DNA of 64,000 nt, taken from positions 62,001 to 126,000 of the IMG/VR virus record IMGVR_UViG_3300027770_000026. One strand, given 5' to 3'. The notes under the pieces were generated by a model. The model did no database searches. It saw nothing but the letters and a program-made list of their open reading frames with translations, and had not been told where the DNA came from. Made by a program: the position numbers and the translations under genes. Shown here piece after piece: positions 1,874 to 61,929 of the stretch. How positions within the stretch are numbered: the first letter of the stretch is position 1; every line of letters begins with the position of its first letter.

Positions 1874-1979
1874 ATTTTCTCTACTTAGTTGTGCTAGAAC
1901 CGTGTACTAGTATTTTAGCAGGGTGTGCGGGGTAATGCAAGAGCATGTCCAAAATATAAAATTTTGGATAAATATTGGC

Positions 1980-2291
1980 ATGAAGTCCACCACCCTAAAA
2001 GTTGCCCTAGCAGTTATTACCACTGTGGGTTCAATTGCTGTTGCAGCATTGACCTTGTTTGGTGGTGGGGACGAAAAAGCTGAACCTGCATCTAATACAC
2101 CGTCTATTGTATTGAGTCCTTCAATGAACCAATCTAGCGTTAATAGCAATACTAATACTGCAACAAATCAAAGTTCAAAGCCCGAACGTCCACCAGTTGT
2201 AAACAATTATATTATCCAACCTGCAGAAGAAAGCCCCGATGAAGAATACGAAGAAATCGTAGACGACACCGAGGCTACAGTAGAACCTTAG
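1980..2291 (+). CDS. membrane-anchored low-complexity protein, late-promoter driven
   Basis: TAAATA at 1969-1974, 5 nt before ATG 1980; N-terminal signal/TM, Asn/Thr-rich middle, acidic tail. Confidence 0.65.
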   Translation: MKSTTLKVALAVITTVGSIAVAALTLFGGGDEKAEPASNTPSIVLSPSMNQSSVNSNTNTATNQSSKPERPPVVNNYIIQPAEESPDEEYEEIVDDTEATVEP

Positions 2292-2293
2292 TT

Positions 2294-3298
2294 TTACTTT
2301 TCAAGCCTAGTAACAATTGTAGGCTGCTTAGGACACTTGTTCTTATACTTGATCTTGGTAATCACTTTAGGTGGTGGTGTAGGATGGAATACCACTTCTC
2401 GAACTACTTCCCTGATAATCTGCTGCGGAGGCGGCGCAAGCGGTGCCACAGTTACTGCCGCAGTGGGGGGAGCCGATGGAATTGGTACGTCTTTGGTGAT
2501 AATTGGAGGCGGTTCACGGCATTCAACCCCAGCAGCAGCCATTGCCTTATCAATCTTTGGATCCTGTCGAGCATAGAAACAAGCTGCACTCGGTAGTCCC
2601 ATTGTTAGCAGCAACTTGGTGTTCTTGATCATAACACAGTTTTCATCAACCACAGTCTTGCCACCGCTTACGCCTAGGATCTGTGTCTGCACTCCGCCTG
2701 TTACCGAACCCAAGCAGGTGTCTGCACCTGCAGTTAGATTGCTGCCAACAGCACTGTTAACTGGGTTCAGTCGTTCACGATAAACATCGCTAAATGACTG
2801 ATTCACCGTAGTAGAGTTACCGCTACCATTACCACTTGCAGTAGCGTTGCCACCTTGTGCAGTTGCTACCGAATAACCGCCATTGGCTACCTGATGCTGT
2901 TCCTGTCCCTGTAGTTGATCCTGAACCTGTGTTTGGTTCTGATCTAGTGCATTAACATTGTCGTTACGGTTGTTGTTAGCATTACTGCTAGTGCTAGTGT
3001 TAGTGTTGCTGCTGTTGACTGTGTTGTTATTACGATTAGCAACATGGTTAACATTGGACAATGTATTGGTGTTATCAATAGCGTTGTTATTAGTATTAGC
3101 ACCATTTAAACTATTATTGTTGGTGTTATTACCAGTGAGTGAATTGGTATTGTTACCAACCAGGCTGTTGGTATTAGTACCAGTAACAGTTCCTGACGTT
3201 CCCACAAGAGGACTACCGCCTTCGTTATCATTGCTGGCCATTGCCACACTAGTACACAATACAGCAGCAATAGCTGCTGATAGAATAAACTTCTTCAT
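2294..3298 (-). CDS. secreted Asn/Thr/Gln-rich repeat protein
   Basis: Sec signal (MKKFILSAAIAAVLCTSVAMA), NTNxLxG repeats, Cys-containing C-terminal domain; AAGGAG SD. Confidence 0.8.
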   Translation of the reverse strand: MKKFILSAAIAAVLCTSVAMASNDNEGGSPLVGTSGTVTGTNTNSLVGNNTNSLTGNNTNNNSLNGANTNNNAIDNTNTLSNVNHVANRNNNTVNSSNTNTSTSSNANNNRNDNVNALDQNQTQVQDQLQGQEQHQVANGGYSVATAQGGNATASGNGSGNSTTVNQSFSDVYRERLNPVNSAVGSNLTAGADTCLGSVTGGVQTQILGVSGGKTVVDENCVMIKNTKLLLTMGLPSAACFYARQDPKIDKAMAAAGVECREPPPIITKDVPIPSAPPTAAVTVAPLAPPPQQIIREVVREVVFHPTPPPKVITKIKYKNKCPKQPTIVTRLEK

Positions 3299-3326
3299 TA
3301 AAACTCCTTTAACAGTTATAGGTCGT

Positions 3327-6451: not shown

Positions 6452-6539
6452 CTTCGTCTCCTTGTGTGTATGTGTGTACGCAGGATCGTTCCTGCAATTG
6501 TATATAGCAGATAGTTGTACTATTCATATAAATATTGGT

Positions 6540-8681
6540 ATGAAAATACATGATATACTCACCGAAGCACAGCGTTTTGACTTCGACAAACACCGTGATA
6601 CTATTCTGCGTTTTGTGCAAAATACGCTGGCCGGCAAGCCCAATAACAGACAATTCAATCCCTTTTATGAACTGATTGTGGGTGGCGGGCAAGTGGGTGC
6701 CGCAAACAAATTGGGTATTGATCCCAAGATGGCAGCAACATGGAAACAGTACTTCCAAAGCAAGCCCTTCCTAGGTGGAGCCGGTGAACCTTGGAGTCAG
6801 GTTAACATTGGTGATCAGTACGCTAAGGCCACAGGCGATGACCGAACCCTGAACTTTTATGTTACTGTAAGCAAAGACAAGGACAATATAATGAAGTTCT
6901 TTAGGAACTATCACAGCCTTGCTAGCTACTTACAGCCCATAAGTCAACAGAACCAAACGCCTATCAAGTTTAAAACACACAGTATATTAGACAGCTTTAT
7001 TGGGCACAACGACAGTTTCAAGGTCTACTACTACGATCCTAAACTACGGAACCAAATAGTTGCTGCTGTTAAGAAATGGCTCAGTGACAGTGGTGTAAGC
7101 ACTGCTGCAAGATCACACGAACACGGCGTGGACGTAAAGAGTAATGGTGGTAGCTTTGGACAGTTACTAAGCAATCACGTATACGACGAGTTCACCAAAC
7201 TGATAAAAACAAACGGCGCTAAGGTTACTCCTGAACAGTACTTTGACTGGCTTAAGAAGAATCTCCCTGTGTTAATAGCACAGGTAAAGCCTAAGGAGCA
7301 AATGACAGAATCCTGGAGCAAGGGCTACAAGAAGAGCATTGATTGCTCAAATCCAAAAGGGTTTGGTATGAGAGCCAGCGAATTTATAACTGAAACACCA
7401 CTTGATCCTAGCACATCAAGTAAAATACTAGCTATGGCAACACGGCAAAAATACCAACTGCTGGGACAAGGCGCTGATGCTACTGTATTTGGTAGCTCTA
7501 CTCACCGTCCAAAAACGGTAGTTAAGATAACGTCGGGCGAACTATACACATCTGCAAAAAAAGCCAGCATAGGTTTCGACCACTTTTACGAGTTTTGCCA
7601 ACAGCACCCCGATAGCCCCTACCTGCCAAAGTTTGAGGAACGGGGATTCTTTGAAGTAAACAGGGAAAAGATTCCTTGGGTGCGTATGGAGCGTTTGAAC
7701 GAACATCCACAGGATTTGCATATCTATGCTGCTGTAGATACGCTAATAGAGGAATCATTTAAAAACGAATTTGCTGATTGGAAACTTGTGAAGTCTCTGC
7801 ATCCAAAATTGACCCTACAACAGCTGGGGATGCTTAAGAAATTTTACTCCATGCTCTCGGAACTAACAGACTACTTTTGGAAAAAAAGATCCAAATTGAA
7901 GTGGGATCTAGGAAAACGTAATATTATGTACCGTAGTAACGTTCCTGTTATCACAGATCCGTTCATGGCTAAAGAGCGAGAAGAATATGAAGAATCCTGG
8001 AGTAAGAGCTACAAGAAGAGCATTGATTGCTCAAATCCAAAAGGGTTTAGTCAACGTGCTCACTGTGCGGGACGCAAAGCACGACGTGCGGGCAAGAAGA
8101 CCAAAAGCGGTAGCGTAAGTGAAGAAGGAGAACTACTTTGGTCGTCAATGAATGAAGCTAGAGCCAATAGTGTGGAAGATTACAAGCCCACTGACCAACA
8201 ATTAGATGACCTAAAAAGCAAGTATCTTCCCAATTGGGAAATGTCAGATCATAAAATGTTACAGGCACGCTACATAGCCAAAGATCATCGACGTGCTGAA
8301 AAATTTATCAGGTTCATAAACCAAGTATCCGAACGTATGGATCACTTTGCCAAAGTAACTCAGGATGTATCCGAAGTCACTGTGGAAACAACTACCTTTG
8401 ATGTAAAAGGTCTGACTATTTTGGACTTCCAGTTGGCCTCGGCCATAGACAAATATGCAGAAAGAAATCAAATTGAACAGGCGAGGTCAGGCGGTAATTT
8501 TGAAATGTATGAAAACTTTGCAGATGGCGAGAAGCCTGGTCGCAAAGGACTAGCCAAACGTTCAGGTGTTGACTGTAAGCAAAGTGTGAGTAAATTGCGT
8601 AGTGTTGCTAAGAATAGCACAGGTGAAAAGCAGCGTATAGCACATTGGTGTGCCAATATGAAATCAGGGAAGAAAAAATAA
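6540..8681 (+). CDS. capsid-targeted polyprotein: HopA1-like domain, Ser/Thr kinase-like domain, pterin-carbinolamine-dehydratase-like domain and Cys/basic peptide modules
   Basis: TATAAATA at 6527-6534 then ATG 6540 (MKIHDILTE); kinase LGQGADATVF/VVKI/DLGKRNIM/TDP; PCD-like LPNW...MDHF...GLTILDFQLA; modules separated by xxE sites. Confidence 0.8.
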   Translation: MKIHDILTEAQRFDFDKHRDTILRFVQNTLAGKPNNRQFNPFYELIVGGGQVGAANKLGIDPKMAATWKQYFQSKPFLGGAGEPWSQVNIGDQYAKATGDDRTLNFYVTVSKDKDNIMKFFRNYHSLASYLQPISQQNQTPIKFKTHSILDSFIGHNDSFKVYYYDPKLRNQIVAAVKKWLSDSGVSTAARSHEHGVDVKSNGGSFGQLLSNHVYDEFTKLIKTNGAKVTPEQYFDWLKKNLPVLIAQVKPKEQMTESWSKGYKKSIDCSNPKGFGMRASEFITETPLDPSTSSKILAMATRQKYQLLGQGADATVFGSSTHRPKTVVKITSGELYTSAKKASIGFDHFYEFCQQHPDSPYLPKFEERGFFEVNREKIPWVRMERLNEHPQDLHIYAAVDTLIEESFKNEFADWKLVKSLHPKLTLQQLGMLKKFYSMLSELTDYFWKKRSKLKWDLGKRNIMYRSNVPVITDPFMAKEREEYEESWSKSYKKSIDCSNPKGFSQRAHCAGRKARRAGKKTKSGSVSEEGELLWSSMNEARANSVEDYKPTDQQLDDLKSKYLPNWEMSDHKMLQARYIAKDHRRAEKFIRFINQVSERMDHFAKVTQDVSEVTVETTTFDVKGLTILDFQLASAIDKYAERNQIEQARSGGNFEMYENFADGEKPGRKGLAKRSGVDCKQSVSKLRSVAKNSTGEKQRIAHWCANMKSGKKK
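7307..7364 (+). repeat. 58-bp direct repeat, copy 1
   Basis: 56/58 identical to 7991-8048; encodes ESWSKxYKKSIDCSNPKGF. Confidence 0.95.
7991..8048 (+). repeat. 58-bp direct repeat, copy 2
   Basis: 56/58 identical to 7307-7364. Confidence 0.95.
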
Positions 8682-14164: not shown

Positions 14165-14219
14165 GTTTTTGAGTCCAAAATACCTACTTCTAGCCCACGT
14201 TTTCTGCTTAAATAGTGTC

Positions 14220-14759
14220 ATGAAACTGACAGAAATTGGGGAGTCCAAGCCCCACTTGTACTTGGATATGGACGGGGTTCAGGCGGACTTTTTCACTGCA
14301 TGGGCTCGTATACACGATAAGGATCGTTACAAAGAGATTGGAGACAAGGAAGCTCGTGAAGCCAGCATTGTCGATATGGCTGCACGGGGTCCGGAGTTCG
14401 TTGAGGACTTCTTTACTAACTTGGAACCCCTGCCAGGTGGCACCAAGCTGGTTGCATGGCTCAAGGCCAACAGCATCCCCTTCACTATTCTCAGTGCTCC
14501 GCTGCGTGACCAGCGTACGGCCAGTGTAAAGGGCAAACGAGCTTGGTTGGACCAGCATAATCCTGGCACTAGCGACACTGCTAAGTTTGATGGCTTTAAG
14601 GAACGCTACGCTGTTACCGGCGGGCGTGTTAACTTGCTAATTGACGACCATAAGAAGTATATTGGTCGTTGGGAGGAAAAGGGCGGCCTTGGTATTCTCT
14701 ACCGCGATGACCATGTTGACGAAGTCATCGGCCGCCTCAAGGAAATCTACGGCGTTTAG
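14220..14759 (+). CDS. HAD-family 5'(3')-deoxyribonucleotidase (NT5C-like) with capsid-targeting-like N terminus
   Basis: YLDMDGVQADF, ILSAP, LLIDD motifs; TAAATA 14209-14214 then MKLTEIGE. Confidence 0.85.
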   Translation: MKLTEIGESKPHLYLDMDGVQADFFTAWARIHDKDRYKEIGDKEAREASIVDMAARGPEFVEDFFTNLEPLPGGTKLVAWLKANSIPFTILSAPLRDQRTASVKGKRAWLDQHNPGTSDTAKFDGFKERYAVTGGRVNLLIDDHKKYIGRWEEKGGLGILYRDDHVDEVIGRLKEIYGV

Positions 14760-17368: not shown

Positions 17369-17399
17369 TATTTATACACGAACTATCGAGTCAAGTCAA
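17369..17399 (-). promoter_or_regulatory. overlapping late (TATAAATA) and sigma70-like promoter
   Basis: TTGACT-17nt-TATAAA(TA). Confidence 0.6.
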
Positions 17400-17617
17400 G
17401 TTTTAATTTTTTGCTCGCGACGAGTGCGGGCGACAGCTTTGGCTTTAGCACGGCGTGCAACAATGCTGGGCTTGAGGTATTCACGCTTCTTGTCCAGATC
17501 GTCCAAACGTCCACTGTTCTCTACTTTCTTTTTGAACTTGCGCAGCATCTTCTCAAAACTATCGCTGCCGTTATCGTCTACACGTAGACCTTTGATAATT
17601 GGTTCTTTATGTCTCAT
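17396..17617 (-). CDS. rpsU: 30S ribosomal protein bS21
   Basis: FEKMLRKFKKKVENSG.L....KREYLKPS..RR. Confidence 0.88.
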   Translation of the reverse strand: MRHKEPIIKGLRVDDNGSDSFEKMLRKFKKKVENSGRLDDLDKKREYLKPSIVARRAKAKAVARTRREQKIKT

Positions 17618-18861
17618 TATACACCTTTTTTCTTTTGCTTGTGCTTTATCAAAGGCATTTCTTCTGTACCGTTGATATACTCTTTAGTTATCGTTACTGT
17701 GCTTACTGTTTGTAAATTCTTATGGCTAAGACTGTACTGCAACGGTGTTAACTTCTTCTCTAATATACTGCGCAAACTACGTGCGCCTGTTCCCTGCTTG
17801 ATAGCTTTTTGTGCAATACTACTCAGTGCTTCCGGTGCAAACTTTAATTTTACGGGAGAGAACATAGCTTCATACTGTTTGATGATACTGTCTTTTGGTT
17901 CCGTAAGGATCTTGACCATTTGTTCTTCTGTTAGCATTTCAGTGGAAGTGATAACCGGCAAGCGTCCCATTAGTTCTGGGATCATACCATACTTTACCAA
18001 ATCTGTTGCAGCCAATAAGTCCCAATTAATTTTCTTGTTAGATGTTACATTAGCAGAAAATCCAATACCAGTGCTAGTGGACTGTTGCTGCTCTAGATGT
18101 TTCTCTAGTCCAACAAATGCTCCACTACACACAAAGAGGATATTACTAGTGTCCATCTTAACAGTATCACCTAGTCCAAATGGCTTATCTGGATCTGTGG
18201 GTACACTGATCTCGCAGCCTTCGATCATTTTTAGTAGTGCTTGCTGCACACCTTCGCCCGACACATCTCGTTCTACCGTAGCACCACTGTGTGCCCGTGC
18301 GATCTTGTCAATCTCGTCAATAAAGATTATACCTTGTTCAGCTAGTTGTACATTACCATTAGCTGCTTGCAGCAATCTACTTAGGAGTACATCTGCATCG
18401 TCACCTGCATAACCTGCTTGAGTCAGTGCAGTAGCGTCTCCGATTATCATTGGTACACTTAGCAAGTTAGCAATGGCTTTGACCATTAGAGTTTTACCCG
18501 AACCAGTTGGTCCAAGTAACAAGATGTTGCTCTTATCTACTCGTACACTTTCTTTGTCTGCTTTACGGAACAATCGTTTGTAATGATTGTGTACAGCAAC
18601 ACTAAGGACTACCTTAGCTTTATCCTGACCAATTACAATTGTATCAAGATATTCTTTAATCTCAATCGGTGTTATTATTTTAGGTTTAGTTTTAGGTTGG
18701 GGCGTTTTGACTTCGGGTACTTTTTTAACTAATAGGTCTACTATAGACTGTACACATATGTTGCAGATACCCGCTGTTTCACCAACAATCAGACGCTCAA
18801 CTTCTGCCTGAGTTCGCTGACAAAAACTACAGTGCTTTACCGTATTTTTTTTGGATTGCAT
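17617..18861 (-). CDS. clpX: ClpX AAA+ unfoldase
   Basis: C4 zinc finger (CSFC...CNIC), [36 protein letters not shown] loop, GARSLRSI. Confidence 0.96.
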
Positions 18862-19222
18862 TATTCACCAGTAAGTTAATGTTTTCTTCTACAATGTGTC
18901 GTAATGACAACTTGTACAATGTATTTAAGCTCGCGCTGTCATATTCCATGTAATAGCAATTTGGCAGCGATAGTATGTAGCCTGTTAACCAGTGAAACAA
19001 GTTTGGGTTGTTAAATATTATTAGATTGCTTGTTTCTAGCACTGCTAGAACATACTCAATGTCGTTAGTTTGTGGGGATAGATCGTATAACGCAATGTTA
19101 CCGTCTATTTCAACTTCATTGAGTAATGTTGTAACTTTTTCCTGAACTTCTGAATCTAGGCCGATAACCGTTACTTTGAAACCGGTGTATGTAATATCAG
19201 GTGATGTTAACAGACTGATCAT
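18827..19222 (-). CDS. hypothetical protein
   Basis: ORF track; overlaps neighbours. Confidence 0.65.
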
Positions 19223-20495
19223 TGTCTAGGTATTTAAGAATGGCGGCACACTGCACCCAACTTAGTTCGTCAACGGTCATGTTATTGTTAGTAAGTTGAT
19301 CCATTAGATTACGCACAGTTTCTAAACTAATTAGTTCAGGCTTCTCCCTCAAAGAGTCAAGAGAAATAATTTTACCATCAAACCTTACGTAGTCGGGACC
19401 AATCTGTTGATAACGATTTGAGATTAGTTCTCTTGTATTATCCGGTGTCTCTTCTACCGGTGCTTCAACTATAACCCAATTACGTTTTGCTGAATCCCAT
19501 GTCATACTTCCGGGTGTGCTGCTAACAGTGTCATAATTGAATACTTCAGCATGTGGCGGTAATTCGTCGATAAGTGGTGTCGAAGCTACCTCATCTGGTA
19601 CAATCTCAAGATCTGCAGGAGTTGAATCAATTTCTAATTCTATCGGAACTACCACTTCCTCTGCTTTAACTTCCGGCACAGGTTCAACTACTGCAACAGG
19701 TGCAGGTGGTTCTACTGGAAGGATGGGATCGACTGCAGTTTTTGCTGCCTGTTCCTTACGGTGCAGTGCCATGCCAAAGTTAGCAGCAATAAGCATGATA
19801 ACTGCTAGTGGGTCAAACACCACAATAAGGATAATGATTACTGAACGCACTGCTTGGTCAAAGTGACTCTTAGCTTGTTCGCCGTAGATTAGTTCTGCAA
19901 TATACTTTAGCGGGCCAATCTCCGCTTCTACTTTGCGATTGCTAATATCCAGCGGAATCTTTTCTTCGTATAACTTGTCAATGTCTGTTTGTAATGCTTT
20001 CTTTTCGTTTGCAACACCACGAAGCTCGCGTTTCATTCGATCACGCTGTGCCAATGCTTGGCTTACACGATCCTTTTCAATTAGCGCGTCAACTGCATGG
20101 TTGAGACGGTCTTCGGTACCAGTTAGTCTTTCCAGCTGCTTTTCCTTAACAGCAATGTCTTGCTCCATACGTTCCAACTGCAAGCTAGTGTCCGATGTTG
20201 CAGCACGTTGTTCCAAGTGTGCTTTTGATAGATAACCAAAGATTCCCATGCTGGTAATGAACATGAGCACAACTACTGCTGCACTCATATAGGCTTTCAG
20301 CGCACGTGGTGCAGCGATCCAATTGTTATACACCCAACTGGCGCAAACTAACTTGGCTACTTCCAATGTACCGCCCATGATCATGATGCTGATTGGGGCA
20401 GCAGAGAAGATAGCAATAAGTCCTGCAACAGAGAACCAAGCTGCAACGCCACTAAGGGCAAGTCCAGTTAAAAGCATTAGAATTGTAGCAAACAT
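19197..20495 (-). CDS. multi-TM coiled-coil membrane protein
   Basis: Three N-terminal TMs, ITSMGIFGYLS, coiled coil, EIGPLKYIA, VFDPLAV; TAAATA 7 nt before ATG. Confidence 0.8.
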   Translation of the reverse strand: MFATILMLLTGLALSGVAAWFSVAGLIAIFSAAPISIMIMGGTLEVAKLVCASWVYNNWIAAPRALKAYMSAAVVVLMFITSMGIFGYLSKAHLEQRAATSDTSLQLERMEQDIAVKEKQLERLTGTEDRLNHAVDALIEKDRVSQALAQRDRMKRELRGVANEKKALQTDIDKLYEEKIPLDISNRKVEAEIGPLKYIAELIYGEQAKSHFDQAVRSVIIILIVVFDPLAVIMLIAANFGMALHRKEQAAKTAVDPILPVEPPAPVAVVEPVPEVKAEEVVVPIELEIDSTPADLEIVPDEVASTPLIDELPPHAEVFNYDTVSSTPGSMTWDSAKRNWVIVEAPVEETPDNTRELISNRYQQIGPDYVRFDGKIISLDSLREKPELISLETVRNLMDQLTNNNMTVDELSWVQCAAILKYLDNDQSVNIT

Positions 20496-20519
20496 AAGTT
20501 AATATTTATCCCATATGGG

Positions 20520-22669: not shown

Positions 22670-22876
22670 TTATCGCGAAAGCATATCGCCGCCAAACAAA
22701 CTGACGTTCATATTCAGTGCATTATCTGTGGGCTTTTGCTTTTTTGGTAGCTTGTGTTTAGGCTTACGTGAACCACTCAAATATGGATTGGTCACGTGTG
22801 GATTTGCTACGGTTGCAATGCTGCCGGAGCTAGTGCTACCGGCGCTTGCGTCTTCAAGTAGTTCGTGTATTTTCAT
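22670..22876 (-). CDS. small capsid-tagged protein between nrdA and nrdB
   Basis: TAAGTA 5 nt before MKIHELLE; ASAGSTSSGSIA. Confidence 0.7.
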   Translation of the reverse strand: MKIHELLEDASAGSTSSGSIATVANPHVTNPYLSGSRKPKHKLPKKQKPTDNALNMNVSLFGGDMLSR

Positions 22877-22891
22877 ACACGTACTTATACG

Positions 22892-25306: not shown

Positions 25307-25373
25307 CGTAAACTCCTAAGAACTATTGTTAGTATCGTAGTGGTATTTACGTTAGTTGCAAGTGATACTCAAA

Positions 25374-30944: not shown

Positions 30945-31283
30945 TTACTTGGTCAGTGTTGTAGTTGCTACTGTAGCTGAGTTGTTTGCCTCTGTTGCAG
31001 CAACTGCGGTCTGCAATGCTGTAATTGATGTTGCGTCAACTGGACCACCGCTTACACCAAACATCTGCTGTGAACCAGTGTCGTACAATGGGCCAATTGC
31101 TTCAATTGTGTAGCCCATGTTGTCAAACACGCGAAGAACCTGCTGCTGAATACCTGTTACACCAGCTGGTGTTGCACCACTTACGTCGTCGATGTAGTCA
31201 ACAATCAAGAATGTAATATCGCGACCAACTAGCTCAACGCCTGTTGTTGTTGCTGATGGGTTTGCCTTTGAAATACCTGCCAT
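30945..31283 (-). CDS. small virion (decoration-like) protein, paralog A
   Basis: MAGISKANPSAT; TATAAATA, leader hairpin, AGGAG. Confidence 0.7.
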   Translation of the reverse strand: MAGISKANPSATTTGVELVGRDITFLIVDYIDDVSGATPAGVTGIQQQVLRVFDNMGYTIEAIGPLYDTGSQQMFGVSGGPVDATSITALQTAVAATEANNSATVATTTLTK

Positions 31284-31354
31284 AAAATTAATCTCCTATA
31301 TATTTGCTTGCTGCTGCAAGCTGTAATGTATTTATACTCTAAAGGAAAAATGGG

Positions 31355-31993: not shown

Positions 31994-32001
31994 GTGAGTA
32001 T

Positions 32002-36331: not shown

Positions 36332-36338
36332 GTTGTAT

Positions 36339-37037
36339 TTAATCCAAACTTAGCTGTTGGATTAAAGAATGGTTAATGAATTCACTTAGCTTGTCAAGAT
36401 ATCCCTGATTGCGTAATACCTTAAAGGTCAGGTTCTCTACACCATACTGACCATTCTTTGCAAGGCCTGCTTTGCGCATGTTGTTGATCTTGTCTTTAAT
36501 CTCACGCGCCTCGTCAACATCACCGTGTTCAATCGTTTGATCAACCTGACTCATGTAGCTTTTAACACGGGCACTCACATTGCGATCATTTACTGCTGGT
36601 TGTTCCTTGCGTGGCTTCTCTATCCATTTGTCGCGTAATACTGAATAGCAGCCATTGGTAACATTAACTTGATCGATGTCTTGTGCATATAATTCTACTG
36701 GATGTCCGTGAATTTCAACGGGCATATTAAAATTCCACAAACGCTTTTTAGCGTCAAACAATTGTTCTACCAGTTCAGGATCGCAAGTTAGTTTCTTCTT
36801 GTCAACGATTAGGTGTAAGTCAAAGTCACTGTAGTCTGTATAGTTGTAACTGGCCAGACTGCCCGTTAGCTGTACGTCAACTAGGGGTAGCGGATCTATT
36901 TTAAGACTACGTGCGAATTGAAGTGCAGTTTGCAATAAATGCACCTGCACTTCTTTATCTAGCTTGCCCTGATTCCAAACTTTAGGATTAAGCTTGTCAT
37001 GGAATTGAACATTCTTATCAACGTAGCTCTGTTCCAT
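36339..37037 (-). CDS. pol-beta-superfamily nucleotidyltransferase
   Basis: LTGSLASYNY..YSDFDLH, PVELY.QD, ENLTFK.LR. Confidence 0.8.
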   Translation of the reverse strand: MEQSYVDKNVQFHDKLNPKVWNQGKLDKEVQVHLLQTALQFARSLKIDPLPLVDVQLTGSLASYNYTDYSDFDLHLIVDKKKLTCDPELVEQLFDAKKRLWNFNMPVEIHGHPVELYAQDIDQVNVTNGCYSVLRDKWIEKPRKEQPAVNDRNVSARVKSYMSQVDQTIEHGDVDEAREIKDKINNMRKAGLAKNGQYGVENLTFKVLRNQGYLDKLSEFINHSLIQQLSLD

Positions 37038-37903
37038 TACACTGGATACTTACACTTGCCCTTGGTTTCTTCGGGTGGTAGGTACTTGCCGTAATACTTG
37101 ACAATGAGACAGTTGAGGAAGTCTGTGTATTCGGGAATCTTGCTCAACAGCGCGATATCCGCTTGGTTAATTGCCGAGTCTCGCTCGTCCATGAACTGAC
37201 CTGATTCGTAGTGTAGCTGCCACTTTCTCAGCTTACCGCCTGCCTTGGCCATGATAATGTACAGTGGACCTTGGCTGTGATAGTGGGTAAATCTATTGTT
37301 GGTGTCGCCTGCGGTACACCAGCGTGTGCCCGAGCCAATTCTGCAAGCAGCTTCCTCAGTTTGTGGAATGTAGACCTTGAAGTTAGGAGTGTCAATTACC
37401 TTGTTTGCACCCTGCATTTCCTGACGTGCAACTTCCTTGCCGGATACGTCTTCTGCACCGCCTGACAGGTCGGCTAGGTCGTAGAGATCGTTTAGGCTCT
37501 TTAGCTGTAGTAGGTCAGCAACACCATTGGGATACTTGGCTAACAGTTCTTCATTGCCTGGCTCTTTGAGCTTGGTCAGAATGGTACGCTGCGACTTCTT
37601 GAACTTGTCAATGTCTGTCTTAACTTGGTTGAGGTCTTCCATCTTGAACTGACCAGCAATGTACATGTTAGCAATGAACTGTAGATTCTTGCCCTGTGGA
37701 TCAGGGTCTGCTTTCTTAAGTGCTGCTACTATGTCCCTGGAGTCTGGTTGTTTTCCTGCTGGTGTAGGATATGAATTGTCCTTTTGCGCCGCAGCTTCTA
37801 GCTTGGCCTTGAGGTTAGTGGCAATATAATCTGCACGGTCTTCCAATAGCATGGAAGCCCAGTTGCCACGTGATTCTACAATTCGTATTTCTCTAATCTT
37901 CAT
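37037..37903 (-). CDS. capsid-tagged WCT-motif (PcfJ-like) domain protein
   Basis: MKIREIRIVE; EAAC.IG.GTRWCTA...F.HY...GPLYII...KWQLH...FMD..D. Confidence 0.7.
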   Translation of the reverse strand: MKIREIRIVESRGNWASMLLEDRADYIATNLKAKLEAAAQKDNSYPTPAGKQPDSRDIVAALKKADPDPQGKNLQFIANMYIAGQFKMEDLNQVKTDIDKFKKSQRTILTKLKEPGNEELLAKYPNGVADLLQLKSLNDLYDLADLSGGAEDVSGKEVARQEMQGANKVIDTPNFKVYIPQTEEAACRIGSGTRWCTAGDTNNRFTHYHSQGPLYIIMAKAGGKLRKWQLHYESGQFMDERDSAINQADIALLSKIPEYTDFLNCLIVKYYGKYLPPEETKGKCKYPV

Positions 37904-37932
37904 ACCAAATTCTCCATTATGCTTTATTTAGT

Positions 37933-42651: not shown

Positions 42652-43406
42652 TAGTTTTGATGCTCGCGCTTGTTATCAATTTGTCGCATTCTCAGCGTCA
42701 AATCATCCGCGTCACTGGGATTCTTCATGCCTTTGGCTATTTCTCCCACTGCCCATCTGATCAATGCCCCACTGTTTGGATCTGCAGCATATTCTTGCAT
42801 TAGTAATTCCTCGCCCTCGGCCCAACGTTTTTTAATCATAGCTAGGAATACTGCTGTTGCCGTTACGTCTGACAACATGCGTTCACGCGCACGTTCCCAA
42901 AAACTTGCAGGCGTTTGGTTGTATTTCTTTCCTTCAAATTGTGCAGCATACAATGCAATATCCATTGCAGGAGCTGTGAGAATCCGCTCGTTGTATTGTG
43001 AATCCAATGGCAAATCAACTATGCGTTCCGCGTATTTCATACGATCTGATATGGTTCCGTCTTGATCAATTCTGTTGCGCATGTCAACATTAACGCCAAA
43101 CTTTTCCATGTATCTTATCAGATTTGTTAAATCCCGTGCATTGGCTGCTGCAAATTTTTCTTCGTTTCCGTATAACGGGGCACCTTGATACATGAAGGCA
43201 AATTCTGCAGCAAGATCAGGATCTTGCGTTATTGTTTTTCTATAATGACGCAGTGCCTGTTCATGATCGCCGGTAAGTTTGCGACTTGAACTTGCCGACG
43301 GGACCAAGGAGCGCAATCGCTGATATGCTATCGCAGGTATTTCACTTTGATAGTCATCGCCTACTAAGTGCGGGCCAGTATAATAATTGTATAGATTTAA
43401 AGGCAT
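42651..43406 (-). CDS. helical-repeat protein, LYxYH array member 2
   Basis: TAAATA 4 nt before MPLNLYNYYTGPHLVG; QDPDLA, KRWAEGE. Confidence 0.8.
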   Translation of the reverse strand: MPLNLYNYYTGPHLVGDDYQSEIPAIAYQRLRSLVPSASSSRKLTGDHEQALRHYRKTITQDPDLAAEFAFMYQGAPLYGNEEKFAAANARDLTNLIRYMEKFGVNVDMRNRIDQDGTISDRMKYAERIVDLPLDSQYNERILTAPAMDIALYAAQFEGKKYNQTPASFWERARERMLSDVTATAVFLAMIKKRWAEGEELLMQEYAADPNSGALIRWAVGEIAKGMKNPSDADDLTLRMRQIDNKREHQN

Positions 43407-43436
43407 GCAGTATTTAGCTGCAGGTTGGGATATGGG

Positions 43437-52401: not shown

Positions 52402-53238
52402 TTAGATGTTATCTAGTTTCTGAGCAAATTCACTTAGAATTTGATCGTCAATACTTTCTTTGACAATTTTAACCTGCTGCGGGCCAAGTTTCTTCATGCC
52501 GCCTGCCTTTTGTGTAGCTTGTCTTGCTTGTGCTGCTTGCCCGCGTTGTGCAATTGTTTGGCGTTCGGGTTTAGGAGCAGCTGGTTGTGGTTCAGGCGCA
52601 GCGGGTGCTGGTTGTGGTTGTGGTTCAGGCGCAGCGGGTGCTGGTTGTGGTTGCGGGGCAGGTGCAGCAGGTGCTGGTTGTGGTTGTGGTTCAGGCGCAG
52701 CGGGTGCTGGTTGTGGTTGCGGGGCAGGTGCAGCAGGTTGTGGTTCAGGTGCTGCTTGCTGAGGTGTAGGTTGTAGTTGTGGTGTAGGTTGTACTTGGGG
52801 AGCAGCGGTTTGTGGCTGGTCCTGTGCAGCTTGCTGATTGCCTCCACTTTGTGGATTTGCTACAGCATCTCTACGAGAAGACTGCTGTAAATATCCAACT
52901 AGTACTTTACCCAGCTGGCGCATGCTTAATTTTGCATCACCGTCAATTCCTGCTTTCTGTATAGCAGTATTCATTATGCCCTGATCAAATCTACCTTGCT
53001 GGATGCTAACTACATTAACGAGATCATTGGCGCTTACGGCCCGTTCGCCCGATTGCCCCATCCATTTCTTTACCTGCTTGTATAGATTGTTAGCTTCGTG
53101 CGCTACATCTAGCTTACCTAAGGCTTTCTGACTGCCAAGTGTTGCGCCTAGCTTATATAAGCCTCGCTTCCATAGCGGCACTGCACCTATCTCATCGAGA
53201 AATTCTTGTTCTTTAACAGCAAATTCAGAAATCTTCAT
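52402..53238 (-). CDS. capsid-tagged protein with Pro/Gln/Ala linker
   Basis: MKISEF...LDE; PQPAPAAPE repeats; late promoter and GGAG. Confidence 0.75.
   Translation of the reverse strand: MKISEFAVKEQEFLDEIGAVPLWKRGLYKLGATLGSQKALGKLDVAHEANNLYKQVKKWMGQSGERAVSANDLVNVVSIQQGRFDQGIMNTAIQKAGIDGDAKLSMRQLGKVLVGYLQQSSRRDAVANPQSGGNQQAAQDQPQTAAPQVQPTPQLQPTPQQAAPEPQPAAPAPQPQPAPAAPEPQPQPAPAAPAPQPQPAPAAPEPQPQPAPAAPEPQPAAPKPERQTIAQRGQAAQARQATQKAGGMKKLGPQQVKIVKESIDDQILSEFAQKLDNI
52604..52735. repeat. perfect 2 x 66-bp tandem duplication within the PQPA linker
   Basis: 52604-52669 is identical to 52670-52735. Confidence 0.9.
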
Positions 53239-53282
53239 TAGATTAACTCCAGCATTGCTTTATTTAGCAAGGCTGCAATCAA

Positions 53283-56799: not shown

Positions 56800-57231
56800 T
56801 TACACCGCGCCAAAGAACCATCTTGCAACCTGTATTGAACCCTCTGCGTTACCGTTAAGTTCTAGGTACAGAGGACGTTTTAACCCATTTTCATCTGTGA
56901 GACTTATGCCCCAAGTATACATTCCAATGTTTACATCTGCTAGATCTGCTTCTAGAATATTAAGTGCTAGGCGATTGGTAAATCCAGTTTTGATAGCAAT
57001 ATCTTTATCTAATAAGAGAGTCTGCTCTCTGTCTCGCACACGGAAGTTGAAAGTGTAAAGGTTAACAGTAGTTGGCTGTAAATCAAAGTCATTGACTACA
57101 ATATCAATGAAATTGTCTGCACCCTTGTACACTCGCAGTGGCTTGTTCCACATAACTGTGTTACGCACAGTATTTGGTTTGTTAAACCTTGCCATCACTT
57201 CTGGGTTGAATAAATAAGCTGTAATTTGCAT
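56800..57231 (-). CDS. Ig-like/BppU-like virion domain, paralog 1
   Basis: TATAAATA 5 nt before ATG; KPLRVYKGADNFID...WGISL...RPLYL.LNG..EG. Confidence 0.6.
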   Translation of the reverse strand: MQITAYLFNPEVMARFNKPNTVRNTVMWNKPLRVYKGADNFIDIVVNDFDLQPTTVNLYTFNFRVRDREQTLLLDKDIAIKTGFTNRLALNILEADLADVNIGMYTWGISLTDENGLKRPLYLELNGNAEGSIQVARWFFGAV

Positions 57232-57247
57232 AAGAGTATTTATACCC

Positions 57248-59299: not shown

Positions 59300-59799
59300 T
59301 ACCAAAGCTCGTCAATCTTCACAATCTGTTGTGTACGACTAATCTCTCGAGCAAAGAACACACAATTGGGATTACTTCCTTCTGTAAGTGGTACTGCTAA
59401 TAGATGCCCCGATTTAAGCTTGGGGAAGTACCACTTGACTTCGGGATATACATCTACAATATCAATCTTCTCAAAGAGAGGACGGAAACCAGTTAGTGGA
59501 TTTACTGTTAGTGTTTCGAACCCACGCTCGCTGATACTAGTAAGCGGTATAACTTCTAGATCGCCAATCTCAGGATCACCTATCATTACCTGCCAGTCCA
59601 ATGGCATCTTAATTGTATGTTTACCTATTTCTAGTATTGCAGCAGGGGCAGTAAAGCTTTCTAGAAAGATCAAGGGAATAAAAAAGTAATCCGGATCGTT
59701 TGGATCGCTGTTGTCTAGTACTGCAAAACGCAAGTCGTCTACCTCTGCAGGTAGTTCTAGCATGCTCATACTAATGTTTTCAATTGTGAGAATATTCAT
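59299..59799 (-). CDS. conserved replication-cluster protein
   Basis: DYFFIPLIFLESF, WYFPKLK; TGATG overlap. Confidence 0.75.
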   Translation of the reverse strand: MNILTIENISMSMLELPAEVDDLRFAVLDNSDPNDPDYFFIPLIFLESFTAPAAILEIGKHTIKMPLDWQVMIGDPEIGDLEVIPLTSISERGFETLTVNPLTGFRPLFEKIDIVDVYPEVKWYFPKLKSGHLLAVPLTEGSNPNCVFFAREISRTQQIVKIDELW

Positions 59800-61241
59800 C
59801 AAATGTTTACCTTTTGTAGTTCCCATTCATAATTTGCATCGTTATAAAACTGTTTGCGTTTGGTCATGTGTCGCTTGCTGAACTTGCAACTGCTAGTCAC
59901 ATCCCAAATCTCTACACTGTCCTTGTCCTGCGCCTTGCGTAATCCACGTCCGATGCTCTGTATAGTGCGCACGAAACTCTTGCCTGGCTCTACTAGTACA
60001 ATGTGAAACAAGCGTGGTAAGTTAATGCCCACTGCTGCTACACCATATGTCGCAACAATTACCTTACCTTCTGCTGTAGCTACTTCGTCGTAGTGTTCTT
60101 GCCTGTCCTGACTTTTAACACCGCCCGAAATAAACACTGCGTTGGGTATACGATCTACCAATTCTTGTCCTGCTTCGATGCGGTCTACAAGTACTAGTGT
60201 ATTGCCTTGCGCACTGATTTGCTTGACTAGTTTGGACATGTAATCTATTCGTTTAGTATCTGTTAGTAGATACTTGAGTTCGCTTTGGTAGTTGGAGAAG
60301 GTGCGTTGGTCCTGTATCTGTACAATATTAACTTTACACTGTGCAAGTACGCCCTGATCCTGCAGATCTGCTGCACGGATCTTGTTTACTACAGCACCAA
60401 TTCCCACATGTAAACAACGCCATTCAAACTCTTCTTTGGGAATGGTTCCTGTCAACCCCCAACGAATTGGCACTTGCGCAAACGGCCCACTTAGCATGGC
60501 TTTGAGTACATCGCCCTTGGCCATGTGGGCTTCGTCTACAATGATGCAGTTAACACCTTGAGCAAACTCCGGCCACTCAACAGGTGCTGTACCGTCTTTG
60601 GTTTTCTTGCCGAGACTATTCAGACTTTGCCATGTGCAAATGGTATGTGTCTTTTGATATTCTTTCTGACTACCATAGAAAACCCCCACATCTAGACCAA
60701 TTAGCTGATAGTCTTTGAGTGTTTGTTTAACCAAGTCCACGTTGGGTACAATGGTTAAGGTACGCCCATACTTCTCTGCGCGGCTGCACAGTGTAGCAGT
60801 CATTATGGTCTTGCCCGCACCTGTGCTAATCTCTTGTATGCTCTGTGGCTCCGCGAGAAATGCATTGATTGCTTCCACTTGATAGTCACGCAGCGTTACA
60901 GGAGTACCAGCAGAAGTATGATTCTCGGGCCAGGATATATGAGCTAGGCTTTGTTCAGTTACTGATTCGAACTCTAGTTCCCACCCCTGCCTGTAGTCTT
61001 CAATTTCAATATCTAGATGTTCAATCTCAGGAAGGATTTCTTCCAGAAGTTTGAGATAGGTTGTGCCGCTAGCGGCAAAGAACTGAATACACCCGTCCCA
61101 ACGTCCCAATCTTACAGCGGGTAGATGTCGTGCATACGGCACTTGGTATTTGAACTTGCTGACTAACTTGCGCCGCATCATGGGCTCAAGTCCTTCAATC
61201 TTAATGTTGACTTCGTCGCGGATAATGATTTTTACTGTCAT
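59799..61241 (-). CDS. uvsW: UvsW-like SF2 helicase
   Basis: WDG, LRDYQ, TGAGKT, DEAH, GLTGT, QSIGRGLR. Confidence 0.92.
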   Translation of the reverse strand: MTVKIIIRDEVNIKIEGLEPMMRRKLVSKFKYQVPYARHLPAVRLGRWDGCIQFFAASGTTYLKLLEEILPEIEHLDIEIEDYRQGWELEFESVTEQSLAHISWPENHTSAGTPVTLRDYQVEAINAFLAEPQSIQEISTGAGKTIMTATLCSRAEKYGRTLTIVPNVDLVKQTLKDYQLIGLDVGVFYGSQKEYQKTHTICTWQSLNSLGKKTKDGTAPVEWPEFAQGVNCIIVDEAHMAKGDVLKAMLSGPFAQVPIRWGLTGTIPKEEFEWRCLHVGIGAVVNKIRAADLQDQGVLAQCKVNIVQIQDQRTFSNYQSELKYLLTDTKRIDYMSKLVKQISAQGNTLVLVDRIEAGQELVDRIPNAVFISGGVKSQDRQEHYDEVATAEGKVIVATYGVAAVGINLPRLFHIVLVEPGKSFVRTIQSIGRGLRKAQDKDSVEIWDVTSSCKFSKRHMTKRKQFYNDANYEWELQKVNI

Positions 61242-61311
61242 AGATACAAGTGTACTAGGTATATGTATTTAAAGCAAGATGCATAGCCGTAATAGTTGGG
61301 CTAAATACCAC

Positions 61312-61929
61312 ATGCGGGCAACAGAATTCATAACGGAATCACTTGATAAACCCTACCCATGGCGACAGGCAAGAGCCAAATACGCTATGGCAAAATATGT
61401 GTTCCGTGCCAACAGTATACTCAAACGCTATCAGATATCATTTGATGTACGAGGAGACAATCGTGTAGAAGTTGGTTTTGGTCGTTACACTCTGACGCGC
61501 GGTTTAGACCTGGGAAAGACCAAAGATAGTTATCAGGAGGCACAGAGAATCTTTGCTACAGTTGGTGCTGTCATAATGGATTTCCTCAAAAATAATCCCA
61601 GCGTGAACACTATTCATTTCAGTGCCCCTGCAGACAAAGGCGAGACTGAAAAAACATCCAGCAGAATACGACTGTATGGTGCACTAGCCAAACGCCTGCA
61701 ACAACAGTTGGCGTGGCCTAATATAACTCGAGAAGTAGAACCCAATCCTTATACCAATGATCCCGTAGTATATTGGGATATCAGTAAGGATGCCAAAAAG
61801 GTAGAGCCCACACAAGATAGAGATTATGCTGCAGCCCAAGCAGCCAAAAATCCTAACCCTATTTTGGATAAAATATATCCAATGAGAAAAGCTCAAGCAG
61901 TAGACCGAATACTGAGTAAAGGTCTATAA
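61312..61929 (+). CDS. capsid-tagged protein (possible GNAT-like fold)
   Basis: TAAATA 61302-61307 then MRATEFITE; IFATV...F.A...SR.RLY. Confidence 0.7.
   Translation: MRATEFITESLDKPYPWRQARAKYAMAKYVFRANSILKRYQISFDVRGDNRVEVGFGRYTLTRGLDLGKTKDSYQEAQRIFATVGAVIMDFLKNNPSVNTIHFSAPADKGETEKTSSRIRLYGALAKRLQQQLAWPNITREVEPNPYTNDPVVYWDISKDAKKVEPTQDRDYAAAQAAKNPNPILDKIYPMRKAQAVDRILSKGL

What the first reader, a model, noticed from the sequence alone, without database searches (positions are those of the whole stretch)
1969..61314. Late genes with TAAATA 4-7 nt before ATG: apparently leaderless portable cassettes
Seen: TAAATA-N4-7-ATG with no room for an SD at starts 1980(+), 6540(+), 14220(+), 61312(+), 20495(-), 31993(-), 36331(-), 43406(-) and 57231(-), and TAAGTA at 22876(-). 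Other late genes have TAAATA plus a hairpin leader and SD. Known: T4 late promoters are a lone TATAAATA -10 box with the start site a few nt downstream. Inference: a leaderless late class. About 40 bp (promoter, ATG, capsid tag) would make any gene late-expressed and packaged, which fits the lone plus-strand genes. Phage bS21 may bias initiation between the two classes.
Basis: partly seen in the sequence, partly recalled or inferred. Interest (0 to 1): 0.72.

Follow-up and report, generated by a model that had tools for sequence, protein, structure and literature searches.

The report
Late phage promoters abutting start codons
In this uncultured freshwater jumbo phage, about a third of the T4-type late promoters (TAAATA) sit exactly 4-7 bases before the ATG of a gene, so those late messages most likely have no leader and no ribosome-binding site; no transcript 5' end has been mapped yet.

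Summary
All ten sites are in the sequence as described. TAAATA-N4-7-ATG in front of an ORF of at least 60 aa occurs 9 times in the window, against 0.14 in shuffles.

Across the 266-kb genome, TAAATA is about 16-20 times denser between genes than inside them. Its distance to the next long-ORF ATG is bimodal: 29 at 3-8 nt (peak at 5), 2 at 9-14, 45 at 15-50 (mostly with an SD).

The phage is a PA5oct-like jumbo phage. It encodes a gp55-family late sigma. The same box precedes the sheath, tube, baseplate and tape-measure genes, so it is a late promoter. With T4 geometry (box at -11 to -6), N5 puts the A of ATG at +1.

TAA[AG]TA lies 5-8 nt before the TerL ATG in 40 of 63 distinct relatives. A few relatives have box, leader and SD instead. 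Cultured Pelagibacter phage HTVC008M shows the same architecture; T4, KVP40, Syn9 and S-PM2 do not.

An N-terminal tag resembling the T4 capsid-targeting sequence exists on about 20 unrelated proteins. It is enriched in this class but not restricted to it.

No TSS data cover these sites, and the bS21 idea is untested.

Verdict: a probable leaderless late class, a new variant of known things.

The parts
1969..1982 (+). TAAATA-N5-ATG. Start of a 103-aa protein (1980-2291) with a signal-peptide-like N-terminus (MKSTTLKVALAVITTVGSIA). Lone plus-strand gene.
   Evidence: no ortholog in relative G001
6529..6542 (+). TAAATA-N5-ATG. Start of a 713-aa protein (6540-8681) with a pterin-4a-carbinolamine dehydratase domain. 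N-terminal tag MKIHDILTE. Lone plus-strand gene.
   Evidence: no ortholog in G001
14209..14222 (+). TAAATA-N5-ATG. Start of a 179-aa 5'-3' deoxyribonucleotidase (14220-14759). The tag MKLTEIGE precedes the HAD motif DMDGV by 12 residues.
   Evidence: the G001 ortholog keeps TAAATA-N5-ATG with a different spacer
61302..61314 (+). TAAATA-N4-ATG. Start of a 205-aa protein (61312-61929). Tag MRATEFITE. Lone plus-strand gene.
20493..20508 (-). TAAATA-N7-ATG. Start of a 432-aa membrane protein (19197-20495).
   Evidence: in G001 the ortholog has TAAATA 19 nt upstream with a weak SD, i.e. a class switch
31991..32004 (-). TAAATA-N5-ATG. Start of a 212-aa protein (31355-31993). The TAA of the box is the stop codon of the upstream gene.
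   Evidence: ortholog: TAAATA-N4-ATG, N-terminus conserved; homologs with N5 in 5 further loci
36329..36341 (-). TAAATA-N4-ATG. Start of a 161-aa GH19-type endolysin (35846-36331). The TAA of the box is the stop codon of the upstream gene.
43404..43416 (-). TAAATA-N4-ATG. Start of a 251-aa protein of unknown function (42651-43406).
57229..57242 (-). TAAATA-N5-ATG. Start of a 143-aa protein (56800-57231).
   Evidence: the G001 ortholog keeps TAAATA-N5-ATG; N-terminus MQ[IL]TAYLFNPE conserved
22874..22887 (-). TAAGTA-N5-ATG variant. Start of a 68-aa tagged protein (22670-22876, MKIHELLE) between the two ribonucleotide reductase genes.
   Evidence: TAAGTA-N5 is frequent before TerL in relatives; weak variant in this genome
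34757..34845 (-). Long-leader class example. TAAATA at 34840-34845, a 5' hairpin starting at the 6th nt after the box, SD AAGGAG, ATG at 34757 (387-aa gene).
   Evidence: RNA contig 34674-34824 stops 10 nt short of the predicted +1
31283..31334 (-). Leader class. TAAATA at 31329-31334, 5' hairpin (z -4.5), SD AGGAG, ATG at 31283.
37903..37930 (-). Short-leader class. TAAATA at 37925-37930, 21 nt with GGAG, ATG at 37903. The product is a 288-aa tagged protein (MKIREIRIVE) homologous to PA5oct virion protein gp279.
53238..53266 (-). Short-leader class. TAAATA at 53261-53266, 22 nt with GGAG, ATG at 53238 (278-aa tagged protein, MKISEFAVKE).
25306..25349 (-). Leader class in front of the ribonucleotide reductase large subunit. 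TAAATA at 25344-25349, 37 nt, SD AGGAG.
17396..18927 (-). TAAATA (18922-18927) with a hairpin leader, then a Lon-like ATPase (17617-18861), then phage bS21 (17396-17617). bS21 appears to be co-transcribed from a late-type promoter.

Best explanation
TAAATA is the -10-like element of this phage's gp55-type late promoter.

The promoters come in three layouts. (a) The box lies 3-8 nt (mode 5) before an ATG. (b) The box lies 15-24 nt before an SD-led start. (c) The box is followed by a longer leader that opens with a 5' hairpin and ends in an SD.

In layout (a), T4 geometry (box at -11 to -6) puts the A of ATG at +1. The late mRNA would therefore start with, or within about 2 nt of, its AUG. It has no Shine-Dalgarno sequence and must be translated by the leaderless pathway, in which ribosomes bind a 5'-terminal AUG.

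The class holds low-copy late functions: large terminase, endolysin, minor virion proteins, and enzymes. It also holds most lone, opposite-strand accessory genes. High-copy virion proteins (major capsid, sheath, tube) are SD-led.

Shown here: the motif, its statistics, its conservation, the gp55 homolog, and the gene classes. Inferred: the TSS position, leaderless translation, and the expression-level rationale.
For: Promoter identity:
- The genome encodes a gp55-family sigma (phrog_12791 E 1e-79; phrog_234 E 4e-24).
- The box precedes sheath, baseplate wedge, tape measure, tube and fibre genes.
- It is about 16-20 times denser between genes and is depleted on both strands inside genes.
- Both classes share the same flanks: G at -3 and no G just after the box.
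- PA5oct and CBB/GAP32 have the same box before structural genes (PMC5259590).

Geometry:
- The T4 box runs from -13 to -6 (PMC2988020).
- The TerL position-weight matrix in 63 relatives reads T-11 A-10 A-9 R-8 T-7 A-6 when counted from the ATG.

Two classes with an empty zone between them:
- 29 at 3-8 nt, 2 at 9-14 nt, 45 at 15-50 nt.
- The same shape appears in 800 kb of related loci.

Conservation:
- 40 of 63 distinct TerL upstream regions have TAA[AG]TA 5-8 nt before the ATG, 29 of them at N5. A further 4-5 have box, about 25 nt and an SD.
- In G001, three orthologs keep the layout with changed spacers and one is leadered.

Independent calibration of +1:
- tRNA 5' ends lie 6-8 nt after the box.
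- 5' hairpins of long leaders begin 5-8 nt after the box.

Features expected of leaderless mRNA:
- 29 of 31 starts are ATG.
- The first 36 nt fold more weakly than in SD-led genes (-1.9 against -3.2 kcal/mol, p 6e-4).

The starts are genuine:
- One N-terminus carries a signal peptide and another a lipobox signal peptide.
- A Walker A motif sits at residues 9-17 of one protein.
- Ortholog N-termini are conserved.
- No nearby in-frame start has a well-placed SD.

Specific to late promoters: TATAAT is not enriched before ATGs.

Same layout in a cultured phage: HTVC008M has 12 TAAATA-N5-ATG that coincide with annotated starts of late genes.

The major capsid protein is SD-led in both phages.
Against: - No transcript 5' end has been mapped. 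The only RNA run holding this phage gave five read-length contigs, none over a leaderless-type start.
- Start-site choice by this longer, 270-aa gp55 homolog is assumed to equal T4's.
- No gp45-type clamp was found, so the activation mechanism may differ.
- Spacings of 4, 7 and 8 nt need start-site flexibility or 1-3 nt leaders.
- The host is unknown, so its capacity for leaderless translation is unknown.
- Several of these genes lie inside same-strand gene rows and could also be read from upstream transcripts.
- The box also precedes non-structural genes (ribonucleotide reductase, a helicase), so 'late' may be 'middle plus late'.
Confidence: 0.7

Rival explanations
1. The box is a real late promoter, but the proteins are made mainly from longer read-through or polycistronic transcripts. 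Initiation at the SD-less ATG would then depend on termination-reinitiation coupling or on an A/U-rich, S1-dependent mechanism. The leaderless transcripts would be minor or poorly translated.
For: Many minus-strand cases lie in tight same-strand gene rows. At window 32002-32004 and 36339-36341 the TAA of the box is the stop codon of the upstream gene. Few terminators precede these genes in this genome, 3 of 29. About 60 other genes also lack a recognisable SD.
Against: All four credible plus-strand genes of the window have no co-oriented upstream gene, yet show the layout. In many relatives an intrinsic terminator lies directly upstream of the box before TerL. The spacing is fixed relative to the box, not to an upstream stop codon. 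The 9-14 nt gap and the switching between classes are not predicted by coupling.
Confidence: 0.17
2. TAAATA near the ATG acts at the RNA level, as a translation enhancer or as a stop codon plus A/U-rich spacer, and is not a promoter at these sites.
For: The sequence is A/U-rich, lies just 5' of the start, and contains TAA.
Against: The same hexamer at the same 6-8 nt distance precedes three tRNA genes. It lies upstream of SDs and of 5' hairpins in the leader classes. It is depleted on the antisense strand of genes as well. A gp55 homolog is present. Single-base variants show no such signal.
Confidence: 0.05
3. The starts are mis-assigned and the true starts are SD-led codons further downstream or upstream.
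For: At 14220 a TTG 12 codons downstream would give a typical HAD N-terminus, with GGAG 12 nt before it. At 6540 and 61312 the frame is open upstream.
Against: N-terminal residues are conserved in orthologs, and the NT5C extension is kept as a pattern. One N-terminus carries a signal peptide, another a lipobox signal peptide, and a third has a Walker A motif at residues 9-17. In-frame stops lie 3-18 nt upstream at several sites. The ATG keeps its distance to the box in 40 of 63 TerL relatives. HTVC008M annotated starts coincide with the pattern.
Confidence: 0.04

Closest known systems
T4 late promoters (TATAAATA, gp55 / gp33 / gp45 system)
   Same: A lone A/T-rich box at the -10 position with no -35 element, and a gp55-family sigma encoded by the phage. 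The box precedes virion genes. The geometry is -11 to -6 relative to the presumed +1.
   Different: The core here is 6 bp (TAAATA, in relatives also TAAGTA), with no fixed TA before it. In T4 the box is followed by leaders of about 16-31 nt with an SD, and there is no N4-6-ATG class. The sigma homolog is 270 aa against 185 aa in T4. No gp45-type clamp was detected.
Leaderless phage mRNAs: lambda cI from PRM; (from my own knowledge) the many leaderless middle and late transcripts of Thermus phages P23-45/P74-26 and of mycobacteriophages
   Same: Transcription starts at the A of the AUG. There is no SD, and translation begins on a 5'-terminal AUG (PMC10491246).
   Different: Those use host sigma-70/sigma-A-type promoters. 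They are either single regulatory genes or occur in hosts where leaderless mRNAs are common. Here the class hangs on a phage-specific gp55-type promoter and coexists with SD-led late genes driven by the same promoter type.
Pelagibacter phage HTVC008M (cultured T4-like myophage that encodes bS21)
   Same: There are 12 TAAATA-N5-ATG at annotated starts of late genes: tape measure, DNA end protector, head closure, and tail-tube cap. The major capsid protein is SD-led. The phage encodes bS21.
   Different: It is a different lineage (Kyanoviridae-like, 147 kb, 33% GC). Its consensus is ATAAATAG. It has hardly any short-leader class. I found no paper describing this layout.
PA5oct / Atu_ph07 / CBB-GAP32 jumbo phages (nearest cultured relatives)
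   Same: Synteny, with 47-55% identity in DnaB and TerL. PA5oct has a gaTAAATA box before structural genes, and CBB/GAP32 an ATAAATA motif. bS21 is present in PA5oct and Atu_ph07 (PMC5259590).
   Different: Their boxes are mostly 23-33 nt from SD-led starts. In 41 kb of PA5oct only gp262 has TAAATA-N5-ATG. In five of the six cultured relatives examined TerL is SD-led or otherwise leadered. In Phosso the ATG is preceded by a one-mismatch CAAATA 7 nt upstream and no SD. The PA5oct paper reports only sigma-70-like promoters (PMC7318152).
T4 capsid-targeting sequence (CTS, MKTYQEFIAE) of the internal proteins
   Same: A short N-terminal peptide shared by otherwise unrelated proteins and ending in [LIF]-x-E, together with an encoded gp21-type protease. 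In T4 the CTS is the only conserved part of a diverse protein set, and it packages foreign proteins (PMC3012670).
   Different: The consensus here is M[KR][ILA]x[ED][ILF]x(x)E, on about 20 proteins that include enzymes. Packaging and cleavage are not shown.

Membership tests
gp55-type (T4-like) late promoter system | The phage encodes a gp55-family late sigma factor | tested here: met
   phrog_12791 E 1.3e-79 and phrog_234 E 4e-24 at genome 200923-201699. phrog_234 is the family of T4 gp55 itself.
gp55-type (T4-like) late promoter system | A TATAAATA-like box at -10 with no conserved -35 element | tested here: met
   TAAATA core with only weak flanking preferences and nothing conserved upstream. 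Only 13 full TATAAATA occur in the genome.
gp55-type (T4-like) late promoter system | The box precedes virion (late) genes | tested here: met
   Sheath, baseplate wedge, tape measure, tube, fibre, TerL and endolysin. It also precedes ribonucleotide reductase and a helicase.
gp55-type (T4-like) late promoter system | gp45 sliding clamp (and gp33 co-activator) as activators | tested here: inconclusive
   PF02916 and PF09116 gave no match. The record is about 80% complete and the clamps are divergent. gp33 was not searched.
gp55-type (T4-like) late promoter system | Transcription starts about 6 nt after the box | not testable with these tools
   The RNA run has no coverage at the sites. Indirect support comes from tRNA 5' ends at +6 to +8 and hairpins starting at +5 to +8.
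Leaderless mRNA | The primary transcript starts at, or within a few nt of, the start codon | not testable with these tools
   Inferred from promoter geometry only.
Leaderless mRNA | No Shine-Dalgarno sequence, and an AUG start codon | tested here: met
   Only 3-8 nt lie between the box and the ATG. 29 of 31 starts are ATG. SD-led genes are common elsewhere in the genome.
T4-type capsid-targeting sequence | A short conserved N-terminal peptide on otherwise unrelated proteins | tested here: met
   19-20 proteins carry it. No pairwise similarity remains once the first 12 residues are removed.
T4-type capsid-targeting sequence | The peptide ends in a gp21-type cleavage site ([LI]-x-E), and the phage encodes such a protease | tested here: met
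   Tags end in ELIE, ELTE, ILTE, FITE and similar. Peptidase_S77 E 1.2e-26 at genome 214675-215106. The site rule itself is from my own knowledge of T4.
T4-type capsid-targeting sequence | Tagged proteins are found inside capsids and are N-terminally processed | not testable with these tools
   Only one tagged protein (window 37903) has a PA5oct homolog seen in virions by mass spectrometry.

The most novel reading that the evidence does not exclude
Phage-encoded bS21, made from a TAAATA-driven operon, remodels host ribosomes late in infection so that they can translate, or balance, the leaderless late mRNAs. In this reading, late promoter + AUG + capsid-targeting tag forms a roughly 40-bp portable module that turns any acquired gene into a late-expressed, packaged and injected protein.

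So far the leaderless-type late class is seen only in gp55 phages that carry bS21 (this clade and HTVC008M). It is absent from four bS21-negative T4-like phages. PA5oct also carries bS21 yet has few such genes, and the ATAAATA-N4-6-ATG pattern shows no excess in Atu_ph07. The published work I read points the other way for E. coli: losing bS21 favours leaderless mRNA (PMC10491246).
Probability: 0.1. Interest if true: 0.85.

Novelty: new variant of a known kind. Interest (0 to 1): 0.6.

Why it matters
If the predicted start sites hold, gp55-type late promoters can be fused directly to start codons. That would give a second, SD-independent translation class inside the late regulon of a very large uncultured phage clade: at least 590 IMG/VR contigs carry relatives of the marker genes. 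An abundant marine phage, HTVC008M, would share it.

Practical and conceptual consequences:
- Gene callers and start-site annotation for these phages should take the layout into account.
- It suggests a simple way in which these phages could set protein dosage: SD-led for high-copy virion proteins, leaderless for low-copy ones.
- It suggests how newly acquired single genes could be plugged into late expression with about 15 bp of DNA.
- With the tag, it points to a set of about 20 candidate packaged or injected proteins, enzymes included.
- It offers a concrete, testable context for the long-standing question of why phages carry bS21.

Tried and rejected
- RNA evidence. Both run searches found one lake metatranscriptome (X14). 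Laying it on 31001-37000 gave five read-length contigs, all in SD-led long-leader genes and none at 31993 or 36331. There is therefore no TSS evidence either way.
- Megablast of 10 kb against phage records found nothing.
- The search for related loci with the 251-aa protein (43406) found no relative.
- PA5oct genome-wide TAAATA-N3-7-ATG shows no excess over the control, 52 against 78, because the genome is AT-rich. A closer look showed the same box there, mostly leadered.
- Terminator-promoter modules are frequent before TerL in relatives but occur at only 3 of 29 sites in this genome, so I did not use them as general evidence.
- Host inference from bS21 failed. The only homologs were metagenomic, plus a 34% match to a Lentimicrobiaceae MAG.
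- The published bS21-phage clade (PMC9723584) infects Bacteroidetes and has a different bS21 context. It is not this clade.
- Rejected: a host sigma-70 box as the source of the pattern (TATAAT 1 against 4.4 expected).
- Rejected: the tagged proteins being a paralog family.
- Rejected: chance.
- Literature searches for a leaderless late class in gp55 phages found nothing in the held library. That is absence of evidence only.

Full report
WHAT THE WINDOW IS

The window is bases 62001-126000 of a 265,892-bp IMG/VR virus record from a freshwater metagenome, estimated about 80% complete. Its nearest cultured relatives are Pseudomonas phage PA5oct and Agrobacterium phage Atu_ph07 (DnaB-like helicase 46-47% identical to both; TerL 55% and 48%). 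Gene order is shared with PA5oct. More than 590 IMG/VR contigs carry relatives of its helicase or terminase at 56-63% identity, so it belongs to a large uncultured clade.

THE OBSERVATION

In the window TAAATA-N4-7-ATG occurs 14 times, against 4.3 +/- 2.1 in dinucleotide shuffles. Nine of these open ORFs of at least 60 aa, against 0.135 in shuffles.

TAAATA as such is under-represented in the window, 40 against 52.5 expected. In the whole genome, 81 of its 137 copies lie in the 15.6% that is intergenic. That is about 2.0 per kb, against about 0.1 per kb on either strand inside genes. No single-base variant behaves like this: they are 10-32% intergenic against 59% for TAAATA.

An unbiased scan found TAAATA at N5 to be the most enriched hexamer upstream of long-ORF ATGs, 13 against 0.94.

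THE BOX IS A LATE PROMOTER

The genome encodes a gp55-family late sigma factor.

With a 15-60 nt leader and an SD, the box precedes the tail sheath, baseplate wedge, tape measure, tail tube, a virion protein and a tail fibre gene. PA5oct has the same gaTAAATA before its mass-spectrometry-confirmed structural genes. An ATAAATA late motif was predicted for CBB and GAP32 (PMC5259590).

The box also precedes ribonucleotide reductase and a helicase. 'Late' may therefore include an earlier phase.

THREE LAYOUTS AND A FORBIDDEN ZONE

I measured the distance from the box to the first ATG that opens an ORF of at least 50 aa. It is 3-8 nt in 29 cases (14 at exactly 5), 9-14 nt in 2, and 15-50 nt in 45. 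Same-composition control hexamers give 1-15 at 3-8 nt.

The same bimodal shape appears in 800 kb of related loci. Counts are 35, 51, 14, 13, 9 at 4-8 nt, then 1-5 per position at 9-15 nt, then 6-22 per position at 16-26 nt. Those loci are homologous to one another, so the counts are not independent.

A leader of 3-8 nt is too short for an SD and too long for a 5'-terminal AUG. The gap is what a leaderless class and an SD-led class would predict.

T4 itself has only the leadered class. KVP40, Syn9, S-PM2 and Atu_ph07 show no excess of the narrower ATAAATA-N4-6-ATG pattern.

WHERE TRANSCRIPTION SHOULD START

In T4 the box occupies -13 to -6 (PMC2988020). TAAATA-N5 therefore puts the next base at +1. 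Three observations in this phage agree with that.

- Counted from the TerL ATG in 63 distinct relatives, the conserved positions are T-11 A-10 A-9 R-8 T-7 A-6.
- Three tRNA genes begin 6, 7 and 8 nt after a TAAATA. The start site cannot lie further downstream than that.
- In the long-leader genes of the window, stable hairpins (z -2.3 to -5.3) begin 5-8 nt after the box. That is where a protective 5'-terminal stem-loop should begin.

EVOLUTIONARY SUPPORT

TerL of this phage (genome 151297) has TAAATA-N5-ATG. Among 63 distinct upstream regions of TerL orthologs, 40 have TAA[AG]TA 5-8 nt before the ATG, 29 of them at N5. The sequence around the box is not conserved, and an intrinsic terminator often lies just upstream. 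Four or five relatives instead have the box, about 25 nt, and an SD.

In a 108-kb relative (G001), orthologs of 14220, 31993 and 57231 keep the layout with different spacers and conserved N-termini. The ortholog of 20495 is leadered.

Of 124 leaderless-type ORFs in the helicase neighbourhoods of relatives, 90 have no homolog in this genome. The layout is therefore common on variable genes.

THE STARTS ARE REAL, AND THE mRNAs LOOK RIGHT

- N-termini include one signal peptide and one lipobox signal peptide.
- One protein has a Walker A motif at residues 9-17.
- In-frame stops lie 3-18 nt upstream at several sites.
- No nearby in-frame start has a well-placed SD.
- Start codons are ATG in 29 of 31 cases.
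- The first 36 nt fold more weakly than in SD-led genes at equal G+C.
- The host-type TATAAT box is not enriched before ATGs, so the layout is specific to the late box.

WHICH GENES

The leaderless-type class includes TerL, the GH19 endolysin (36331) and three virion-protein families. It also includes a P-loop kinase, a deoxyribonucleotidase (14220) and a 713-aa protein with a pterin dehydratase domain (6540). The rest are membrane or secreted proteins and unknowns.

The major capsid protein is SD-led here and in HTVC008M. I infer that high-copy proteins use an SD and low-copy ones the leaderless layout.

All four credible plus-strand genes of the window are of the leaderless type. Three of them have no ortholog in G001.

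THE TAG

About 20 proteins begin with M[KR][ILA]x[ED][ILF]x(x)E. Examples are MRIHELTE, MKIHDILTE, MRATEFITE and MRLMELIE. Nothing is shared beyond residue 12.

T4 begins two genes with MKTYQEFIAE. [quoted passage not shown] In T4 that sequence is the only conserved part of a diverse set of packaged proteins, and it can carry foreign proteins into the head (PMC3012670).

This phage encodes a gp21-type prohead protease. The tags end in [LIF]-x-E, which fits that protease's site rule as I know it for T4.

The tag is over-represented on leaderless-type genes: 12 of 169 against 6 of 519 distinct N-termini in relatives, p 1.6e-4. Most tagged genes in this genome are nevertheless SD-led or coupled. 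The 'cassette' is a tendency, not a rule, and packaging is not shown.

bS21

The gene (17396-17617) follows a Lon-like ATPase behind a TAAATA with a hairpin leader.

bS21 is present in G001, HTVC008M, PA5oct, Atu_ph07, Phosso and a Vibrio jumbo phage. It is absent from T4, Syn9, S-PM2, KVP40, XaC1, GAP32 and 121Q.

Both lineages with the leaderless-type class carry bS21. So does PA5oct, which has few such genes. Atu_ph07 also carries it, and the narrower pattern shows no excess there. In E. coli, loss of bS21 favours leaderless mRNA (PMC10491246). The link is open.

A CULTURED PHAGE WITH THE SAME LAYOUT

Pelagibacter phage HTVC008M has 12 TAAATA-N5-ATG, against 0-2 in controls. They coincide with the annotated starts of the tape measure, DNA end protector, head closure and tail-tube cap genes. 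I found no paper that describes this.

WHAT IS MISSING

No 5' end has been mapped. The one metatranscriptome that holds the phage gave five short contigs, all in SD-led late genes. One ends 10 nt short of a predicted +1 and does not cross the box, which is compatible but not informative.

VERDICT

The best reading, at about 0.7, is a leaderless late mRNA class created by placing a gp55-type promoter 5 nt before the ATG. This is a new variant of two known things: T4-type late promoters and leaderless phage mRNAs. It is shared by a large uncultured clade and by HTVC008M.

Noticed in passing
G000:C1:37680, 49366 and 52914 (minus strand; outside the window): tRNA-Gly, tRNA-Pro and tRNA-Ala begin 7, 6 and 8 nt after a TAAATA. 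tRNA-Thr and tRNA-Lys begin 9 nt after a TATAAT. The primary transcripts would have almost no 5' leader for RNase P to remove. The 58-aa 'ORF' at 52917 is really the tRNA-Ala.
   Followed up: partly
NC_020484 (Pelagibacter phage HTVC008M): 6280, 7562, 11972, 16007, 18916, 18943, 19456 and others: A cultured T4-like phage with an annotated bS21 has 12 TAAATA-N5-ATG at annotated gene starts, including tape measure, DNA end protector, head closure and tail-tube cap. It has almost no short-leader class, and its major capsid protein is SD-led.
   Followed up: partly
window 28565, 33536, 37903, 45100, 46982, 50090, 52091, 53238 (minus strand) and 6540, 14220, 61312 (plus strand): About 20 unrelated proteins share an N-terminal M[KR][ILA]x[ED][ILF]..E peptide that resembles the T4 capsid-targeting sequence. 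They include a deoxyribonucleotidase and a protein with a pterin dehydratase domain. These are candidate packaged or injected proteins.
   Followed up: partly
window 32002-32004 and 36339-36341 (minus strand): The TAA of the promoter box is also the stop codon of the upstream gene. Stop codon, promoter and next start codon are packed into 14 nt.
   Followed up: no
window 17284-17374, 18861-18927, 30019-30079, 30837-30884, 31283-31334, 34757-34845 (minus strand): Long late leaders open with a stable hairpin that begins 5-8 nt after the box, i.e. at the predicted first transcribed base. This looks like a 5' stabiliser.
   Followed up: partly
L010:1921-1950 (PA5oct record 128846-128875): The annotated PA5oct TerL start lies inside a terminator-like hairpin. 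Homology to this phage's TerL begins at the ATG 27 nt downstream, so the annotated start is probably too far upstream.
   Followed up: no
window 17396-17617 (minus strand): Phage bS21 lies directly behind a Lon-like ATPase and next to the ribonucleotide reductase genes. In the published Bacteroidetes bS21-phage clade it lies in the capsid gene block instead. bS21 is conserved in PA5oct, Atu_ph07, Phosso and relative G001.
   Followed up: partly
window 22670-22876 (minus strand): A 68-aa tagged ORF (MKIHELLE) sits between the two ribonucleotide reductase genes. PA5oct has only a 53-nt gap at that place.
   Followed up: no
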